A stretch of 63,692 nucleotides of DNA, counting the filler, from Octopus bimaculoides (Eukaryota): NCBI RefSeq assembly GCF_001194135.2. It is 5 parts of 5 records of this genome, joined end to end, with 100 filler letters (N's around TTAATTAATTAA, not from the genome) between each part and the next. Parts side by side here need not be neighbours in the genome. Positions count along the whole stretch, not along the records: positions 36,062 to 46,549 come from NC_069006.1; 4 more parts are not named here. One strand, 5' to 3'. Position numbers and translations under genes: made by a program. Each line of letters begins with the position of its first letter. Positions within the stretch are counted from its first letter, which is position 1. The notes under the pieces were generated by a model. The model searched no databases, was not told the origin of the DNA, and saw only the letters and a program-made list of their open reading frames with translations. Below are positions 3,903-46,649 of this stretch, one piece after another.

Positions 3903-4904
3903 NNNNNNNNNNNNNNNNNNNNNNNNNNNNNNNNNNNNNNNNNNNNNNNNNNNNNNNNNNNNNNNNNNNNNNNNNNNNNNNNNNNNNNNNNNNNNNNNNN
4001 NNNNNNNNNNNNNNNNNNNNNNNNNNNNNNNNNNNNNNNNNNNNNNNNNNNNNNNNNNNNNNNNNNNNNNNNNNNNNNNNNNNNNNNNNNNNNNNNNNNN
4101 NNNNNNNNNNNNNNNNNNNNNNNNNNNNNNNNNNNNNNNNNNNNNNNNNNNNNNNNNNNNNNNNNNNNNNNNNNNNNNNNNNNNNNNNNNNNNNNNNNNN
4201 NNNNNNNNNNNNNNNNNNNNNNNNNNNNNNNNNNNNNNNNNNNNNNNNNNNNNNNNNNNNNNNNNNNNNNNNNNNNNNNNNNNNNNNNNNNNNNNNNNNN
4301 NNNNNNNNNNNNNNNNNNNNNNNNNNNNNNNNNNNNNNNNNNNNNNNNNNNNNNNNNNNNNNNNNNNNNNNNNNNNNNNNNNNNNNNNNNNNNNNNNNNN
4401 NNNNNNNNNNNNNNNNNNNNNNNNNNNNNNNNNNNNNNNNNNNNNNNNNNNNNNNNNNNNNNNNNNNNNNNNNNNNNNNNNNNNNNNNNNNNNNNNNNNN
4501 NNNNNNNNNNNNNNNNNNNNNNNNNNNNNNNNNNNNNNNNNNNNNNNNNNNNNNNNNNNNNNNNNNNNNNNNNNNNNNNNNNNNNNNNNNNNNNNNNNNN
4601 NNNNNNNNNNNNNNNNNNNNNNNNNNNNNNNNNNNNNNNNNNNNNNNNNNNNNNNNNNNNNNNNNNNNNNNNNNNNNNNNNNNNNNNNNNNNNNNNNNNN
4701 NNNNNNNNNNNNNNNNNNNNNNNNNNNNNNNNNNNNNNNNNNNNNNNNNNNNNNNNNNNNNNNNNNNNNNNNNNNNNATAATTTTAATCTTCGGATTTTT
4801 TTAATATGCTAGACCACTGGTTTTAATTGATTAATATCAATTTCTACCCTTATTAATAAATTTTATATATATATGCATATATGTATTCTTTTATTTTTTT
4901 AATT

Positions 4905-36800: not shown

Positions 36801-36960
36801 TTGTCAGAATCTGACCAACAGCTGTATGAGAACTTTACACTCACCGTGTCTGACCGATGGCAACAAGAAATTACAGAGACTGTCTTCGACACTGTCAATG
36901 CCGAGACTGACAAGTTGGAAATGAAGAAAAAACCAAAGAGAGAAGACCAAATAGAAAAAG
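36801..36960 (+). CDS. GRK2: GRK2/3-type G protein-coupled receptor kinase, exon after the AGC C-tail (phase 0 to 1)
   Basis: TCCTTCAG| acceptor and AAAG|GTCAG donor. [40 protein letters not shown] matches GRK2 [40 protein letters not shown]. Confidence 0.93.
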
Positions 36961-37224
36961 GTCAGAGGTCGTTTCATTCCTGTCTGTCTGTCTGTCTTTG
37001 TGTGGTTTTGTGCTGATAGTGTTGTTTTGGTAGTAGGGTTTGAGATGGGGATGGAGGGGAGACGTCGTGTGACTGAAACTGACTGGAAATGTATGCTGCT
37101 GAAATTAGTGTATCTTTTATGCCATCAAATCTAATATTAATTTTAAAATGAAGAATTAGTAAAAGCCTTCATCTAACAGAAATCAATCAATTTACTTTAG
37201 TCAATATAAATCACCTTTTATCTT

Positions 37225-37567: not shown

Positions 37568-40464
37568 GTGGATTTTATTTCCAATCGTTTTAGTCACTAA
37601 AACCATGTAAGGGTTATAGTCTCTTATACAGAGATATAATTCTAAAATACTTTAATCTGTAAAACTATATAGATGTATATTTTCTGATTTATAAATATAA
37701 TTTAAAATACTTCAGTCAATAAAACTATGTAGAGGTATAAATATAAAATAAGATATTTTAGTCAGTGACACTATCTAATGGTTATATTTTCTAATTAATA
37801 AATATAATTCTAAAAATATGGGCTGTGGTTCTTGAACAGAAAGAAAATATCAGATATGTCTCTGTTACGAAACAACAGGGACAACCTTGATATATATTGT
37901 GTGTGTGTATTGTTTATATTAGTTATATATCTCTCGTAAGCAGGGTTTGTGTGTGTGTGTGTGTTGTGGTACATTGTTGTATTTTAAATGTGATCTGTTA
38001 TTTCATGAAAATCTTTAATATTTATTGTGGTCTCTTGTATGTTTAACTGTTTTTTTTGTTTCGATTAAGTTTGGAAATTAGGAAGAATTTACTAAAATAA
38101 CCTTGTCATTAATTAAGCTAGTGTTTTAGAAAATAAATTAGCATGAAATTCTGATGGAAGGTTTTAATTTAGATCATTTCAGAAAAGCAAGTTTGTGTCA
38201 TAGAAATAAGGGGAGATCTTGGTTAGGTTTGTATCAAAAGGGTTAATTGATAGAGTAATATTTTCACAGTGTTACTAAGTCACTTATCTTTTGTCCATGC
38301 CTAAATCTACAGTCAATGCCAGCTTTCTTGCCCCTGTCCCCCACCACCACCATCTTGAAAATGAGATAGGACTTGTATTTAAACAAAGAGTCATTGTAAA
38401 TATGAAATACATTGTTGTTACCTACAAATTTTCAAAATATGGAACAAGCCAGCTTCAAAGGAAATATTCAAATGAAAGATTAAATTACATTTGATGAGAT
38501 TCACATCCACGATGCTTTTCGTGTTCTACTGTTAACAACCAAATTCTTTTATAAATCCATTGCCCATCACTGCTGAGCTGAGCGTTTTCAGGTCGGTCTT
38601 AATCAGCATTAGCTTGATAATTGAATCAGCAATGATAGAATTGACAAAGACAGAACCTAACAAAATTTGCGATTAAAACTGCCGCCACAATGGTCTTTTA
38701 TTTAATTTTGCCATGAAGTGTCCTTGATGACTGGAGTCTAGTTTTCTGCGTCGTTAAATAGCAGTTACAAACTAAATTGAATCTCCCTTCTGGTTAAAAT
38801 CTAGTGCCTCTAGCAAATTTAACTACAAAGCATTAGAATAAAATATCTTCAAATGCTCACAGTTGATAGGTCAATAAGTTATCTAATCAGACATTTCACA
38901 TTTAGCAATCATTCAGGATCAAATGGATGGCTTCATTTTAGAAGATGATTTAACAATAATTAACAAATAAGTGTTAATTATCATCAGAGAATGTTAAATC
39001 ATTATTCTTTTTTTTTTTTTTTTTTTTTTNNNNNNNNNNNNNNNNNNNNNNNNNNNNNNNNNNNNNNNNNNNNNNNNNNNNNNNNNNNNNNNNNNNNNNN
39101 NNNNNNNNNNNNNNNNNNNNNNNNNNNNNNNNNNNNNNNNNNNNNNNNNNNNNNNNNNNNNNNNNNNNNNNNNNNNNNNNNNNNNNNNNNNNNNNNNNNN
39201 NNNNNNNNNNNNNNNNNNNNNNNNNNNNNNNNNNNNNNNNNNNNNNNNNNNNNNNNNNNNNNNNNNNNNNNNNNNNNNNNNNNNNNNNNNNNNNNNNNNN
39301 NNNNNNNNNNNNNNNNNNNNNNNNNNNNNNNNNNNNNNNNNNNNNNNNNNNNNNNNNNNNNNNNNNNNNNNNNNNNNNNNNNNNNNNNNNNNNNNNNNNN
39401 NNNNNNNNNNNNNNNNNNNNNNNNNNNNNNNNNNNNNNNNCAGACACACACACATTTACTGTAAAATTATTAAAACCTGGTAAAAATGTTTAGAAATGCC
39501 AGATATTACCAACTGACCCTTAATGTTTTATTAACATGTTCTTTCTTTCTTTTTCTCTTTTTCTTTTTCTTTTCCGTTGGGTGCGGCGGGGGGGCTTTTG
39601 TCTCTTCTCTCAACTTTCATCCTTACGTTTGAGGTAAGTTTTGTTTGCAGTCAGTCTTCAACAGACTAGTTTACCCTCCATGCTCTTGTCCCAATTTCCA
39701 AAAACCTCGATGGCACAAACATGTGTTGTATGTGTGTGTATATATATGTGTGTTTAAAATATATATACAATATATGTATGTATATATACATACACACACA
39801 CACACATACAGACACTGCACTAATTTGCAGGAATCACTACTTCGCAGGTGACAATTTTACTATCTCTTCTCTGCCCCTATCTTACCACCCACCTACCAGA
39901 CAATGGGTTAGTCCATAGAAACGGTTGATTAAAGTATCATGGGATAAGTAATAAAAGGAATATTTAGTGGCTGTGAGTTCAATACCTGGGTGGGTTAATT
40001 TATATACAGTGATTCGAGCAGAGCAAACAAACAACATCATAACTAGGAGGGGGCGGTTGTCCCAGATATGGACAGTAAAATGATGAAACTACCCTACCCT
40101 ACCCCTGTAAATAGAATAAGAGATTTGGTTCGAAATACTGCACACAACAAGGATTTGAGGAGGGCCTGGGGTTCAATGACTGAAACATTTTGACTCAACA
40201 ACCAAGATAAGGACGCTCCTAATAAAAGAACTGCTTGCTATTATTGTAATTAGTTCTGGGGGATCTTATTTTTGTCTTATTAAAACCTCAGAGACTGTTT
40301 AGGAAGAAATTACTGAATATCAAAGACACGGTTTGCTCTGCTGGGGATTGTGTAGGTTTCCTCTCGTTTCTAGGCTGGCGTGGAGGGTGTCATCTGTTTG
40401 TAGTTGCGACTGTTCCGCTCAATCCACCTCTACAGTGTCGTGAAGTGTTTGCCTGGTTTTTCAG

Positions 40465-40985
40465 GTCGTGTTCCACTGCCCAAGCGCTCCAGCATGGCAT
40501 CAATTGTGATGACCTATCTGCACATTAAGCACATGTCCACCATGTTCCTCATGTGCTCTCGCCACGGTCCGTCATACGCTTTAGATGACGACGGCACGTA
40601 CGAACCTGCAGACGAGAACGGCAACAGGAACCAAATCGAGGCTTCCCTTCCTGCCTCCATCACCAACTTGACAACAAATAGAACCACTGACGACTACGAA
40701 ACAACATCCGAGTGCCTCCTTCATCAGCAACACATTCCTTCTCCCTCCCAGTCTTCTTTCTCTTCTCTCCTTCTTCCTCCTCCTCCTGTTCATTCTTCTC
40801 TTCCCTCTACTCATCCTCATCAGCAGCATAGTCCTCAGGATAATCAAAACAACAACTTCTGTGACCAACAACACAATCATTTCCGCTTATTACATCTTTT
40901 CAATCGATCTGATCATGAACCTCTGCCTTCAACAGAAGGTAATACTGACCACAAATTAGCAACAACACTAATTGCCCAACACTAA
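40465..40985 (+). CDS. candidate alternative terminal exon of the GRK (PH-less isoform)
   Basis: GGTTTTTCAG|GT acceptor in the same phase 1 as exon 44094. Open for 172 codons after the junction Gly. Coding-like GC content. AATAAA at 41068-41073. Confidence 0.4.
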
Positions 40986-42246
40986 TCACTCCAACAGCTC
41001 TTCCCATTTTCCCAGTGTTGCAATTGCACAAATTCTTCACCTACACATTTTTCATTCTTCCCTTTTAAATAAACATAGGTTGTGCACACTTTCTCAATTT
41101 CTGCCGATAAACAGAAACATTTCTATCAACAATGTTCCATAGTTGATCTTATTAGCATTTATAATTCCTGGTGTTTCACTGCAATTCCTGTTACATCTCT
41201 CTTTCCCGCTCTCAGTTCACAGCTGAGCCCCTTTTTTCCAGAGTTTCTCCCTTCGTGTTTCTTTTCTCATATTTTTCCCTTCAAAAGAAACCCAACCCCA
41301 AATTCCTCTGCCTCTCTAGCTCCTTGAGGGCTCTCTCTCCTTCCAATGGTCACAGGAACCCTTGTCTCACTCCAAGACTCCCAAAGCTGCCACTGCACCT
41401 CAGATGTATTTTAGAACATTCCTCGTTTTTATTATAAAGAACTACGATGTTTTGCTTTGACTTCTTCATTCATCTTTTATCTTTCCTCTAACAATAATTC
41501 CTCCTGTTGTCTGCCAATTAAAAATTTGCTAGGAAATTCCTTTGTAGAAATCCCCATTACAAGATTATTTCACCATCCAACACTCCAGTGAATTCTGTAG
41601 AAATGTCTAGAAGTTTTAGATAACCAGGGAAACATGGTTTTCTCCATTTCACTGAAATAGTGTAGTTGTCGCACAATGATGTACTTTTTATGTATGTTTT
41701 TCATTGTACTTTTATGTAACCTACTAAAATGTGTTGAGTAATTCTTCAGTTTCATGTTAAATTCTTTTATATAGTTTGACATAAAAACAAACACTAACAT
41801 GTTTGTGTATATATGTATGTATATGAAATATTGTTGGTCTTCTTGTTGAATCACTTTTGATTACAATCTCTATTGTTTTTACATTGATCTGCTGGTTTTG
41901 TTTTATTTTCAATTGCTTCGTTTTTCAGATTTTGTCAATTGTTTTATATTCTAATGTTAACATTGGAAATTATTAAACTTTACAGCATCTAAGAACTGGT
42001 GTGTGTGTGTGTGTGTGTCTAAACTTTGATGTCATTGTTTTGTTGGATAAAGAGAAAGAGCTGCCCATTTCTCTAATTCCTTGTCTAATTCCCCACAATT
42101 CTTTGTCTAGCCTTGTTCTATTATTTGTGTTGCAAAAAAGTGACAGTGATTGTGTGATTATCTCCCAAATCTAGATCAGGGGACTTATGAAAGAATCATA
42201 GGAATGCCAAACAGACAGAGAAGAAAAAATGGGCATTAATACTGAG

Positions 42247-42425: not shown

Positions 42426-42945
42426 ATTCTTCTGTCACCAATAAAATTAACCCCCAGTTATTTACTGGGCTCAATTTTCTGGACAGTTTTTCCCCCTTTC
42501 CCCAAATACACCCTGCCTCCACGTGTGTATGTATATTAAACACCATCAAAAGGTAACATAATCATTTTGACTGATTGAAGTCAAACCTATTGTGTTTTGA
42601 CATTGCTCACAGCAGCAAGGATGGAAGGAAGGAAGGAAGAAAGGAAGGAATAAGACTTCACAGTTGTTTCATGTTGGACATTGAACACATAATTAGGAGA
42701 CAGAATATTTAGTAATCAATAAATATGTCTCTATATTAGTATTTCCATGTGTGTGTGTGGATAGGTATATATAAATATGGCTACTTGCATATGTGTGTAT
42801 GTATTGTGTTCATATATGTGTGTGTTTTAAATATATTTCCTGTATGTTCTGTGTGCAGGCACATATAACTTAATATTGGTATATCTGTGTATGTAGTGTG
42901 TGCATGTGGTCTGTAGATGCATATATAAATATGTATTTGTGTATA

Positions 42946-42979
<34 letters not shown>

Positions 42980-42989
42980 NNNNNNNNNN

Positions 42990-43029
<40 letters not shown>

Positions 43030-43510
43030 CCTGTGTGTATTATATATATAGGCAATATATATATATATATACTCACACATGTGAGTGCATTGTATATAGG
43101 CATATATATGCACACACACACACACATATATATATATATACACACATGTATGTATTGTATATATATGCATATACACAAATATAAATAATTGTCTTTGTAA
43201 GAAGCTGGGTTGTTTTTTTTCTTTTTGTTTGTTTTCTTTTTGCATTGTTTTTCTTTTTTTTTTCGCTTTATTCTTGTTGCTTATGTAATGTCCTGCTTTG
43301 ATGACCAGTTTTTTTATTTGTTATGTCAGACTGATGGACTTGAGCTGTTAGCTATACAATGGTGTCTGCCACCAAAGGATTGGCTTATGAACCGATATTG
43401 TTGTTCATCTGCTTTTACACACACATACACATGTGTTTGTGAGTGTATACATATGTGTGTGTGTCTATGTATGTGAGTGCGTGTATATATATATGTGTGT
43501 GTGTGTGTGA

Positions 43511-43546
<36 letters not shown>

Positions 43547-43793
43547 GTAGTAATGAGTTGCTGCCAGTACTTAAGCCACAGCAATGTCTATCTCCTTTTG
43601 CTGCCCCCCCCCTTTATCTTTGTTTCTGTCAACATCTATGTCTGTGTGTCCTTGTCCTTGTTTCAGTGCTCCAGTCTGACATAACTGTAGAGTGTAACAA
43701 GGTGTCTGCAACAAGTGAACCCAAGTTAATGCTTTGGGAACTCTGCAAAGGATTTGTATATTTCCAAGCAAGATTGTTTTCTGCAGATGCTCT

Positions 43794-43827
<34 letters not shown>

Positions 43828-44093
43828 CAAGGGAGTGAGCTGGCAGAATTGTTAGCATGCTGGGCGAAATGTTTAGACACATTTTGTCTGTCCTTACATT
43901 CTGAGTTCACTTTCCAACGAGGTCGACTTTGCCTTTCATCCTTTCGGGGTCGATAAAACAAGTACCAGTTGAATACTGGGGGTTGATGTAATCGACTTAC
44001 CCTCCGTCCTGAAATTGCTGGCCTTGTGCTAAAATTTTAAATCATCATCATTATTATTATTGTTATTATTATTGTTCTCTTTCTCGCAAACAG

Positions 44094-44242
44094 GTACAGA
44101 TGTGATTGTGGAAGGAGAGATCTTAAAGCTTGGTGGTCCGTTCTTAAATTCGTGGCAAAAGAGGCACTTACGGCTCTACCCCAACCGTTTAGAATTTTAC
44201 CAGAAGAACCGAGATGGCGGTATACAGAAAAATAAAGTAGAG
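44094..44242 (+). CDS. GRK2: GRK PH-domain exon 1 (phase 1 to 0)
   Basis: AAACAG| acceptor and GAG|GTGAGT donor. (G)TDVIVEGEILKLGGPFLNSWQKRHLRLYPNRLEF matches GRK2 [33 protein letters not shown]. Confidence 0.93.
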
Positions 44243-44818: not shown

Positions 44819-44935
44819 CTTATAACTATGTACGACATAAAAGAAGTCTGCCACGAATTCCAGAAACTGAACAAAACAGACAACTGCATTGTGATGGTAT
44901 TAAAGAATGAAACCAAGTTGGTAATAACCTCCCCG
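44819..44935 (+). CDS. GRK2: GRK PH-domain exon 2 (phase 0 to 0)
   Basis: TTTCAG| acceptor and CCG|GTGAGT donor. LITMYDIKEVCHEFQKLNKTDNCIVMVLKNETKLVITSP aligns to GRK2 LLTMEEIQSV...KCLLLKIRGGKQFILQC. Confidence 0.9.
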
Positions 44936-45328: not shown

Positions 45329-46114
45329 AAGCACTGTTCTCCTTAGCAAAAACGGCGGCGCTAGAGACTTCTAGATTGGAAATAATGTTGCCAACCATTT
45401 TTAAACCCAGTGCAAGGGGGGAGGGGAAGAGGGGGATGTTGGTGTTAATTCATTTTTGACCTCCACCCCACCCCCCTTGTCTTTCCACATCTCTTTCTTT
45501 CTCTTGCTCTCCCATCACACCAAAGCAGCAAAAAGATGAAAAAAAAATGAATAAAAAAAAATATAATGCAGACATGCATATATATGCAGTCACATAGACA
45601 TATATATATATAAATATATATAAATATATAGATGCATACAAAGTATTTATTTAAGAGTAACATTTTTAGAAACCAGCCAATTTTAGTCGGCCAATGCAAC
45701 TGGAAATCAAAGACCAACCCCCACCAAGAATTCATGTCTTGTTAATTAATTAATTAATTCTGGACTAATTTTTGGTAGGGGGGAAGTCAGAAATTTTTCC
45801 TTTTTTTTTTTTCTTTTCCTTTCTCCCTTTTCTTGTCTCGGTTGTCTTGTTTACTTTATTCTAAATGTTGATGTGGGTGTTGAAATTTTTTGTCTCACAA
45901 ATGTGTGTGTGTGCATGTGTGTGTGTATATATATAGGTGTATATATATTTATATATATGACAGTATTGTTCAACCAACAAATTAGAATTTTCTGTCAACT
46001 TCAGAAGATACAGCATAAAAAAAGACACTTGTTGATATATGTATGTATATATATATATATATTCATATATATGTGTGCGTATATTTATATGTATATATAC
46101 ACACACACATACAC

Positions 46115-46146
<32 letters not shown>

Positions 46147-46301
46147 ATGTGTATATATGCATACATATATATATACACATATTCCTGTGCTGGTATTTAG
46201 ATGATGCATTTTTCTTTGATAGAGAGAAGGAAAAAAAATAGTCAGATGAGAAAGATAGGAAATGAAACAAATTTGTACAAATGGTGAAAAATATATATAT
46301 A

Positions 46302-46339
<38 letters not shown>

Positions 46340-46649
46340 CATACAAAGAAAATATAACCTAAATTGTTTTCTTTTTGCAATGAAGTTTAACTACAAAACA
46401 AACTTTTTTTTTTTCTCTTGTCTCTTGCACTCTCAAAATTTGAACCCTGGGGGACAAAGACTAACCAATTCTTCAGCTTGGTTTAAATGTTCACCAAATT
46501 GCTTCACTTGAACTCACTTTGAATATATTGAATCTCTTGTGTCTCTCTCNNNNNNNNNNNNNNNNNNNNNNNNNNNNNNNNNNNNNNNNNNNNTTAATTA
46601 ATTAANNNNNNNNNNNNNNNNNNNNNNNNNNNNNNNNNNNNNNNNNNNN

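What the first reader, a model, noticed from the sequence alone, without database searches (positions are those of the whole stretch)
40465..40985. Candidate alternative last exon giving a GRK isoform without its PH domain
Seen: inside the 7.1-kb intron between the IEK-G exon (ends phase 1) and the first PH exon lies a coding-like, GC-richer ORF. Its TTTTTCAG|GT acceptor joins in frame (G|GT = Gly), it runs 172 codons to a stop, and AATAAA follows 83 nt later. The tail starts RVPLPKRSSMASIVMTYLHIKHMSTMFLMC (basic, then hydrophobic, with a Cys), followed by acidic and S/P/Q/H-rich sequence. Established: the GRK2/3 PH domain binds G-beta-gamma and PIP2, while GRK1/4/5/6 use lipidation or amphipathic helices instead. 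Inference: splicing could switch the membrane-targeting mode of this kinase. A second phase-1 acceptor at 40373/40374 would give a short alternative tail (GWRGGCH...SAH*).
Basis: partly seen in the sequence, partly recalled or inferred. Interest (0 to 1): 0.7.

Follow-up and report, generated by a model that had tools for sequence, protein, structure and literature searches.

The report
Conserved hidden exon in octopus GRK2-type kinase
An unannotated protein-coding exon sits inside an intron of an octopus GRK2-type (rhodopsin-kinase-like) gene and is conserved in four cephalopod-like genomes, but its conserved splice sites at both ends suggest an in-frame insert that keeps the PH domain, not a new last exon that removes it.

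Summary
The ORF is real. It is open from 40404 to 40985, the acceptor is at 40464/40465, the stop is at 40983-40985 and AATAAA is at 41068. It is also genuinely coding. Orthologous copies turned up in three other species-level sequences. Against the distant pair, synonymous sites are saturated, yet a 36-codon block shows 5/3/19 substitutions at codon positions 1/2/3.

The "last exon, no PH domain" reading is only partly supported. A donor site, CAGAAG|GTAA at 40938/40939, lies 45 nt before the stop. It is conserved at nucleotide level in all four sequences. The acceptor-to-donor length is always a multiple of three (474, 483, 351, 351 nt). The exon enters and leaves in phase 1, the same phase as the flanking GRK exons. 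Past the donor, conservation collapses and a frameshifting indel appears between the two distant species.

The best reading is a 158-codon in-frame cassette exon, placed in the linker between the RH (regulator of G protein signalling homology) domain and the PH domain, near GRK2 residue 555. It encodes one conserved predicted helix followed by a His/Ser/Thr/Pro-rich disordered stretch. The published Octopus vulgaris cDNA (79.6 kDa) is too small to contain it, so it would be alternative.

No transcript data could be reached. Inclusion, tissue pattern and poly(A) use remain untested. Linkage to GRK exons in the distant species is also unproven.

The parts
36801..36960 (+). Constitutive GRK exon. 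It encodes the C-terminal RH helices ([12 protein letters not shown]…KREDQIEK-G) and ends in phase 1. The donor GT is at 36961-36962.
   Evidence: It aligns to GRK2 residues 499-~555 in solved structures.
40332..40464 (+). Conserved intronic block just upstream of the exon. It holds a candidate branch site (cgTGAAg), a pyrimidine tract and the AG at 40463-40464.
   Evidence: 40373-40464 has 1 mismatch in 92 nt against L001, while far intron is 80% identical. The 40 nt before the acceptor are 92.5% identical between L002 and L008. CCTGGTTTTTCAG is identical in all four sequences.
40465..40938 (+). Proposed cassette exon: 474 nt, 158 codons, phase 1 in and phase 1 out.
   Evidence: The frame is open. 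Orthologous intervals are 483, 351 and 351 nt. Omega is 0.43-0.48 against L001 and 0.29 for L002 against L008. There are no indels in 351 nt between L002 and L008.
40482..40589 (+). Conserved N-terminal block KRSSMASIVMTYLHIKHMSTMFLMCSRHGPSYALDD. Residues 10-32 (40494-40562) are a predicted helix.
   Evidence: Against L002, substitutions fall 5/3/19 on codon positions 1/2/3 over 36 codons. 29 of 36 residues are identical to L002. The AF2 helix has pLDDT about 80.
40917..40944 (+). Conserved exon end EPLPSTE-G plus the donor CAGAAG|GTAATA. GT is at 40939-40940.
   Evidence: Blastn segments over this site: 28 nt at 96% identity to L002 and 31 nt at 97% to L008. Third codon positions of the last 8 codons are identical in 7/8 and 8/8, against 36-37% across the whole exon. 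It is the best donor-like site in the ORF.
40939..40985 (+). Read-through tail (G)NTDHKLATTLIAQH and the stop TAA at 40983-40985. It is translated only if the donor is not used.
   Evidence: It is not alignable to the distant species beyond about +24 nt. A 1-nt indel lies in the equivalent tail between L002 and L008.
41068..41073 (+).
   Evidence: It is present here and in L001. It is not positionally conserved in L002 or L008. Such hexamers occur about once per 395 nt in this intron.
40372..40373 (+). In phase 1 it would give a 51-residue out-of-frame tail.
   Evidence: It is conserved in L001 only, as part of the near-invariant intronic block. The distant species align only from 40428-40448 onward, so this site falls outside the conserved region.
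44094..44242 (+). First PH-domain exon (G|GT ACA GAT… TDVIVEGEILKLGGPF…KNKVE). It starts in phase 1.
   Evidence: the Pfam PH hit and alignment to the GRK2 PH domain.
44819..44935 (+). Second PH-domain exon (LITMYDIKEV…VITSP), phase 0 to phase 0.

Best explanation
Window 40465-40938 is a genuine protein-coding alternative exon of the GRK2/beta-ARK-type kinase gene. It has been kept under selection over deep divergence.

It is most likely used as an in-frame cassette. The upstream exon (…IEK-G) would splice to 40465, and the conserved donor at 40938|40939 would splice to the first PH exon at 44094. This inserts 158 residues into the RH-PH linker, near GRK2 Gly555, without losing the PH domain.

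The insert has four parts:
- a basic Ser-rich start (KRSS);
- one conserved, moderately hydrophobic predicted helix (MASIVMTYLHIKHMSTMFLMCSR) followed by an acidic patch;
- a length-variable His/Ser/Thr/Pro/Gln-rich disordered spacer;
- a conserved EPLPSTE end.

Shown here: coding constraint, conserved splice signals at both ends, phase and length compatibility, and absence from the known cDNA.

Inferred: that both junctions are actually used in GRK mRNA; and that the helix acts as a docking or regulatory element tethered by a flexible spacer next to the PH domain that binds G-beta-gamma and lipid.
For: (1) Orthologues.
- P0001/L001 is a close species, 84-87% amino-acid identity, and colinear with window 40241-42187.
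- P0002/L002-L007 and P0026/L008 are two distant species, with dS 0.40 between them.

(2) Coding signature.
- Window against L002 over the 36-codon N-terminal block: 5/3/19 substitutions by codon position.
- pS is about 0.70-0.76 (saturated or nearly so) against pN 0.33-0.36. Omega for L002 against L008 is 0.29.
- No indels in 351 nt of exon between L002 and L008, while the flanks carry indels of 11, 64, 9, 1 and 9 nt.

(3) Splice signals.
- CCTGGTTTTTCAG is identical in all four sequences.
- The donor AAG|GTAA is conserved, and synonymous sites in the last 8 codons are nearly invariant (7/8 and 8/8, against 36-37% overall).
- It is the best donor-like site in the ORF.

(4) Lengths and phase.
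- Acceptor-to-donor lengths are 474, 483, 351 and 351 nt, all 3n.
- The exon is phase 1 at both ends, matching the flanking GRK exons. The Gly codon G|GT is regenerated at both junctions.

(5) Flanking intron. Conservation next to the exon is high: 98.9% over the 92 nt upstream against L001, and 91.7% over donor +1..+24 between L002 and L008. Conservation then collapses in the distant pair.

(6) Host gene. The flanking exons are GRK2-type: they align to GRK2 residues 499-609 and hit Pfam PH.

(7) Known cDNA. The published O. vulgaris rhodopsin-kinase protein is 79.6 kDa and carries the same DGGIQKNKV motif. The known mRNA is therefore too small to hold this exon (PMC8465341).
Against: - No transcript, junction read or annotated isoform containing the exon could be found. 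The protein databases reached here hold no cephalopod GRK at all, so this absence says nothing either way.
- In the only long distant-species locus (L008, ±10 kb) no GRK exon is detectable by tblastn or tblastx. Linkage to GRK outside the window's lineage is therefore unproven.
- Between the window and L001, the sequence past the donor is as conserved as the exon (91%). The close pair cannot separate cassette use from terminal use.
- Omega for the middle of the exon is only about 0.5.
- A conserved Met at residue 10 in all four sequences also allows translation to start inside the exon.
Confidence: 0.55

Rival explanations
1. One reading: an alternative terminal exon. The acceptor at 40465 is used and the donor at 40939 is ignored. 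Translation runs on to TAA at 40983, and the transcript is polyadenylated after AATAAA at 41068. The product is a kinase without a PH domain. This could coexist with cassette use, making a composite exon.
For: - An in-frame stop lies 15 codons past the donor, and AATAAA follows 83 nt later. Both are conserved in L001.
- Sequence from 40939 to 41101 is 91% identical to L001, above the 77-81% background.
Against: - The donor and the 3n length are conserved in all four sequences. A purely terminal exon does not need either.
- Between L002 and L008 the tail carries a 1-nt indel and drops to 75% identity, then to 54% further downstream.
- The tail is 14 residues long in the window and 35 in L002 and L008, and the sequences are unrelated.
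- The poly(A) hexamer is not positionally conserved and is common in this intron.
Confidence: 0.15
2. The exon belongs to a different transcript from the full-length kinase. One form is an internal-promoter or 5'-UTR-spliced isoform that starts translation at the conserved Met10 (ATG 40494) and continues into the PH exons, giving a kinase-less protein made of the new N-terminus plus the PH domain, similar to beta-ARKct. The other form is an exon of a separate nested gene.
For: - Met10 is conserved in all four sequences.
- No GRK exon lies within ±10 kb in L008.
- Residues between the acceptor and KRS are not conserved between the two species groups.
Against: - The acceptor region is conserved and the frame is open from the acceptor in all four sequences.
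- The phase matches the upstream GRK exon.
- No other conserved coding block lies in the 7.1-kb intron or in L008 ±10 kb that could serve as a partner exon of a nested gene.
Confidence: 0.2
3. A chance ORF in C-rich, low-complexity intron sequence, or a repeat or transposon fragment, with no coding function.
For: - Strong C-over-G skew and low-complexity S/P/H/Q sequence make stop codons rarer.
- The ORF alone has P of only about 0.003-0.03.
- No Pfam or PDB match.
Against: - The substitution pattern shows three-base periodicity. The ORF, the 3n length and the splice sites are kept across saturated synonymous divergence.
- Searches of 5.8 and 1.8 billion proteins returned only single-locus orthologues, so this is not a repeat family.
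Confidence: 0.03

Closest known systems
GRK6 C-terminal splice variants (GRK6A/B/C) and GRK1b (retained last intron). Cited from my own knowledge, not tested here.
   Same: Alternative splicing in a GRK gene changes the region C-terminal to the kinase/RH core, which governs membrane or partner association.
   Different: Those variants replace or truncate the extreme C-terminus and alter lipidation sites. Here the best-supported product keeps the whole C-terminal PH domain and gains an internal 158-residue insert. It also occurs in the GRK2/3 subfamily, for which I know of no comparable isoform.
GRK4 alpha/beta/gamma/delta cassette-exon isoforms. Cited from my own knowledge.
   Same: In-frame inclusion or skipping of whole exons in a GRK.
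   Different: The GRK4 cassettes are ordinary parts of the conserved fold, namely the N-terminal PIP2-binding and C-terminal regions. The octopus exon is an extra, mostly disordered segment with no counterpart in other GRKs (no Pfam or PDB match).
Canonical octopus rhodopsin kinase / Ov-GRK1, a beta-ARK-like protein of 79.6 kDa (PMC8465341).
   Same: The same gene type. The flanking exons encode the same RH end and PH start, including the DGGIQKNKV motif.
   Different: The published protein is too small to contain the 158-residue insert, so it represents the skipped form.
Variable RH-PH linkers in GRK2 proteins of other invertebrates, for example P0010.
   Same: Extra Ser/Thr/Asn-rich residues lie at exactly this linker position, which shows that the site tolerates insertions.
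   Different: Those are short (about 30 residues), appear to be constitutive linker expansions, and are not homologous to this exon. They have no conserved helix block.

Membership tests
GRK2/beta-ARK subfamily gene (host gene) | C-terminal RH helices followed by a PH domain | tested here: met
   The spliced flanking exons align to GRK2 residues 499-609 (E = 3e-28) and to GRK3. Pfam PH scores 26.6 bits against a cutoff of 25.1.
In-frame alternative cassette exon | Functional-looking 3' splice site conserved across species | tested here: met
   CCTGGTTTTTCAG is identical in four sequences. The 40 nt upstream are 92.5% identical between L002 and L008, against 60-75% further out.
In-frame alternative cassette exon | Functional-looking 5' splice site conserved across species | tested here: met
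   AAG|GTAA(T/A) is present in all four. Synonymous sites next to it are nearly invariant. It scores 7/9 against the consensus, equal to the constitutive donor.
In-frame alternative cassette exon | Length a multiple of 3, with an open frame in the phase set by the neighbouring exons | tested here: met
   Lengths are 474, 483, 351 and 351 nt. The exon is phase 1 in and phase 1 out, and the flanking exons end and start in phase 1.
In-frame alternative cassette exon | Both inclusion and skipping seen in transcripts | not testable with these tools
   Skipping is implied by the 79.6-kDa cDNA. No transcript resource for cephalopods was reachable.
Alternative terminal exon (intronic polyadenylation) | In-frame stop after the acceptor, followed by a poly(A) signal | tested here: met
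   TAA is at 40983 and AATAAA at 41068. The hexamer is common in this intron, at 17 per 6.7 kb.
Alternative terminal exon (intronic polyadenylation) | Coding constraint and poly(A) signal conserved through to the stop and 3' end | tested here: not met
   Between L002 and L008 the tail has a 1-nt indel and 75% identity. The distant and close species have unrelated tails. Hexamer positions differ.
GRK membrane anchors that need no PH domain (GRK5/6 amphipathic helix; GRK1/7 CaaX) | A strongly amphipathic basic helix, or a C-terminal CaaX box | tested here: not met
   The helix has a hydrophobic moment of 0.14-0.28. The read-through tail ends …IAQH, with no Cys at position -4. Palmitoylation of the conserved Cys30 cannot be tested here.

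The most novel reading that the evidence does not exclude
The exon is a composite switch point that yields up to three products from one GRK2-type gene:
- the canonical kinase;
- a kinase carrying a His-rich, helix-bearing insert beside the PH domain;
- either a PH-less kinase, by polyadenylation after the exon, or a kinase-less protein made of the new N-terminus plus the PH domain, started at the conserved Met10. The latter would be a natural analogue of the G-beta-gamma scavenger beta-ARKct.

This would give cephalopods a spliced way to tune G-beta-gamma-dependent receptor desensitisation.
Probability: 0.12. Interest if true: 0.65.

Novelty: new variant of a known kind. Interest (0 to 1): 0.42.

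Why it matters
GRK2-type kinases are recruited to activated receptors through their PH domain, which binds G-beta-gamma and PIP2. In cephalopods this kinase is the rhodopsin kinase of the retina and is also expressed in skin and suckers.

A deeply conserved optional 117-161-residue insert right at the hinge before the PH domain would be a previously undescribed way of modifying a GRK2-family enzyme. I know of no GRK2/3 isoform of this kind.

It is easy to test by RT-PCR or with existing RNA-seq data. It also shows that current cephalopod gene models may miss conserved alternative coding exons.

If instead it is used as a terminal exon, it would make a PH-less GRK2, which would be of similar interest.

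Tried and rejected
- Pfam and PDB sequence searches of the ORF and of the conserved block gave no meaningful hit.
- A profile search of 1.84 billion representatives gave only orthologues, plus one weak tandem-repeat protein, P0027 (E = 3.7e-4), which I treat as chance.
- A search with flanking exons plus cassette, meant to catch spliced products, found no cephalopod GRK of any form. The database cannot speak to expression.
- An exact look-up of the window's own ORF found nothing on record.
- Synteny in L008: tblastn, blastn and tblastx found no GRK exon within ±10 kb.
- A scan of metagenome contigs for the conserved donor motif gave 0 hits.
- RNA structure or miRNA as an explanation for the near-invariant block upstream of the acceptor: fold z-scores were 0.72, 0.97 and -0.64, and all Rfam hits fell below gathering score in TA/CA microsatellites.
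- The amphipathic membrane-helix idea: the hydrophobic moment is low.
- Literature searches for a cephalopod GRK isoform and for the run accessions returned nothing relevant.
- All Logan contigs look genomic: they are colinear with the intron and bounded by repeats. They are not transcript evidence.

Full report
**1. The observation**

The piece carries part of a GRK2/beta-ARK-type gene on the + strand.
- The exon at 36801-36960 encodes [12 protein letters not shown]…KREDQIEK and ends with one base of a split codon (…AAA G|gtcaga).
- The next known exon starts at 44094 (acag|GT ACA GAT…) and encodes the start of the PH domain. A second PH exon lies at 44819-44935.
- Spliced together, these exons align to residues 499-609 of solved GRK2 structures (E = 3e-28) and pass the Pfam PH threshold.

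- It is open from 40404 to TAA at 40983-40985.
- The acceptor tttttcag|GT is at 40464/40465, in the frame required by a phase-1 junction.
- 172 codons follow the split Gly codon.
- AATAAA is at 41068.
- GC is higher than in the rest of the intron.
- The second acceptor at 40373/40374 gives the short GWRGGCH…SAH* tail.

By composition alone, an open frame of this length has a chance probability of about 0.003 to 0.03. That is suggestive but not decisive.

**2. Related sequences**

A protein search with the tail found two ORFs from Logan assemblies: P0001 (84% identity) and P0002 (67% identity over the first quarter). A profile search of 1.84 billion representatives added P0026.

The contigs behind these hits are as follows.
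- L001 and L009 are 2.7 kb, from two runs of one close species. They are colinear with window 40241-42187.
- L002-L007 are about 1.1 kb, from seven runs of one distant species. They are bounded by microsatellites.
- L008 is 20.5 kb of a 126-kb ENA contig from a second distant species.

All of them look like genomic DNA rather than spliced transcripts. No hit suggested a repeat family.

**3. It is coding**

Against the distant species only two stretches align at DNA level: 40428/40448-40597 and 40912/40915-40942.
- In the first stretch, 36 codons (KRSSMASIVMTYLHIKHMSTMFLMCSRHGPSYALDD) differ at 5, 3 and 19 sites at codon positions 1, 2 and 3. This is the signature of purifying selection on this reading frame.
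- Synonymous sites between the two species groups are saturated or nearly so (pS about 0.70-0.76), while pN is 0.33-0.36.
- The two distant species differ by dS 0.40, with omega 0.29. Omega for the window against L001 is 0.43-0.48, and about 0.2 in the N-terminal block.
- Between L002 and L008 the exon has no indel in 351 nt. The flanks carry indels of 11, 64, 9, 1 and 9 nt.

**4. It has a conserved donor as well as a conserved acceptor**

*Acceptor.* The 13 nt CCTGGTTTTTCAG before the exon are identical in all four sequences. Conservation extends about 40 nt upstream.

*Donor.* At the other end, the conserved stretch stops at CAGAAG|GTAA, at window 40938|40939. That is 45 nt before the stop codon.
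- This is the best donor-like site in the ORF. It matches the consensus as well as the constitutive donor at 36961 does.
- The last eight codons are identical at 7/8 and 8/8 third positions between the window and the distant species. The figure is 36-37% over the whole exon and about 50% in the N-terminal block. This constraint acts on the nucleotides themselves, as expected next to a used splice site.

*Length and phase.* The acceptor-to-donor interval is 474 nt here, and 483, 351 and 351 nt in the others. All are multiples of three. The exon is entered and left in phase 1, and G|GT = Gly is rebuilt at both junctions with the GRK exons.

*Beyond the donor.* The two distant species stay similar for about 24 nt. 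After that they fall to 75% identity with a frameshifting 1-nt indel, and then to 54%. The read-through tails of the two species groups are unrelated in sequence and length. The AATAAA is conserved only in the close species. Such hexamers occur once per about 400 nt in this intron.

**5. Interpretation**

The comparative pattern is that of a regulated, in-frame cassette exon. It would insert 158 residues (117-161 in the relatives) between the last RH helix and the PH domain, near GRK2 Gly555, and would keep the PH domain.

The published O. vulgaris rhodopsin-kinase protein is 79.6 kDa and has the same DGGIQKNKV motif as this window (PMC8465341). The known mRNA is therefore too small to hold the exon, which makes the exon alternative.

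Its near-invariant upstream intron also fits regulated splicing: 1 mismatch in 92 nt against L001, while far intron is 80% identical.

Between the close pair, the sequence past the donor is as conserved as the exon (91%). However, the model explains neither the conserved donor nor the 3n length.

A third possibility is an isoform that starts at the conserved Met10 and runs into the PH exons, or an exon of another transcript. This stays open for two reasons. No transcript data could be reached. L008 also shows no GRK exon within ±10 kb. In the window both neighbouring exons lie about 3.2-3.5 kb away, so the introns there would have to be at least three times longer.

**6. The encoded segment**

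There is no Pfam or PDB relative.

AlphaFold2, run on a four-sequence alignment, predicts one helix at residues 10-32 with pLDDT about 80, a weak second helix near the C-terminus, and disorder elsewhere.

The helix is moderately hydrophobic but not clearly amphipathic, with a hydrophobic moment of 0.14-0.28. There is no CaaX box. I therefore see no support for a switch of membrane-anchoring mode.

Conserved features are:
- KRS before the helix;
- Cys30-Ser-Arg;
- a Pro-x-Tyr-x-Leu-Asp-Asp acidic patch;
- a His-rich character in the spacer (HQQH/HPHQQH here, runs of His in the distant species);
- the EPLPSTE end.

My working model, which is inference only, is a docking or regulatory helix held on a flexible, possibly metal- or pH-sensitive, spacer next to the PH domain.

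**7. What is known**

To my knowledge GRK4, GRK6 and GRK1 have splice variants that affect their ends, but no GRK2/3-type kinase is described with an optional insert at the RH-PH hinge. Literature searches here found nothing on cephalopod GRK isoforms.

Other invertebrate GRK2 proteins carry short, unrelated linker expansions at the same point (P0010), so the site tolerates insertions.

**8. Verdict**

The specific reading "last exon, no PH domain" is only partly supported. An in-frame cassette that keeps the PH domain is the better-supported model (about 0.55). Terminal-exon use (0.15) and an alternative transcript (0.2) are the live rivals. Expression is entirely untested. Interest is moderate.

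Noticed in passing
window 40332-40464: An intronic block just upstream of the exon is almost invariant against the close species: 1 mismatch in 92 nt over 40373-40464, while the exon itself is 91% identical and far intron 80%. It shows no fold signal on either strand and no Rfam match. It is probably a splicing-regulatory element, but that was not tested.
   Followed up: partly
window 40560-41720: Strong C-over-G strand asymmetry (GC skew -0.35 to -0.63) continues about 700 nt beyond the exon. Over the same span identity to L001 is raised (88-91%), apart from a 64-nt indel at 41104. The cause is unknown.
   Followed up: no
window 39030-39440 and 42980-42989: Two assembly gaps (411 N and 10 N) lie inside the same intron. 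Any element hidden there could not be examined.
   Followed up: no
P0027: A 410-residue protein built of about 97-residue tandem repeats contains MLLICTEHGPSEED, which resembles MFLMCSRHGPSYALDD in the exon's conserved block (profile E = 3.7e-4, summed over 4 repeats). It is probably chance, and its origin is unknown.
   Followed up: no
window 39716-39816, 42887-43178, 43405-43510, 45410-45641, 45893-46349: Dozens of Rfam miRNA-family matches, all below gathering score, fall on TA/CA/GT microsatellites and on both strands. I treat them as artefacts of low-complexity palindromes.
   Followed up: yes
window 43477-43956 (+): A second long open frame of 159 codons in the same intron starts in a GT microsatellite (CVCVCV…). 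No relative was found for it in L008 by tblastx. It is consistent with chance.
   Followed up: partly
L008 2807-3070 (-): An ORF contains HPPYSADLAIPDYHLF, a motif I recall from mariner/Tc1-type transposases, so this may be a transposon remnant about 7 kb upstream of the orthologous exon. No search was run on it.
   Followed up: no
L009 (P0028) compared with L001 (P0001): Two runs of the close species differ by one nonsynonymous change (Pro to His in THPHQQH) in the low-complexity part of the exon.
   Followed up: no
L008, called genes listed: Two called genes I tried (18554-19027 and 4520-4618) contain stop codons when translated from the locus as listed, while 14501-14710 matches a plain ORF. 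Some neighbour coordinates or gene models in that record may be unreliable.
   Followed up: partly
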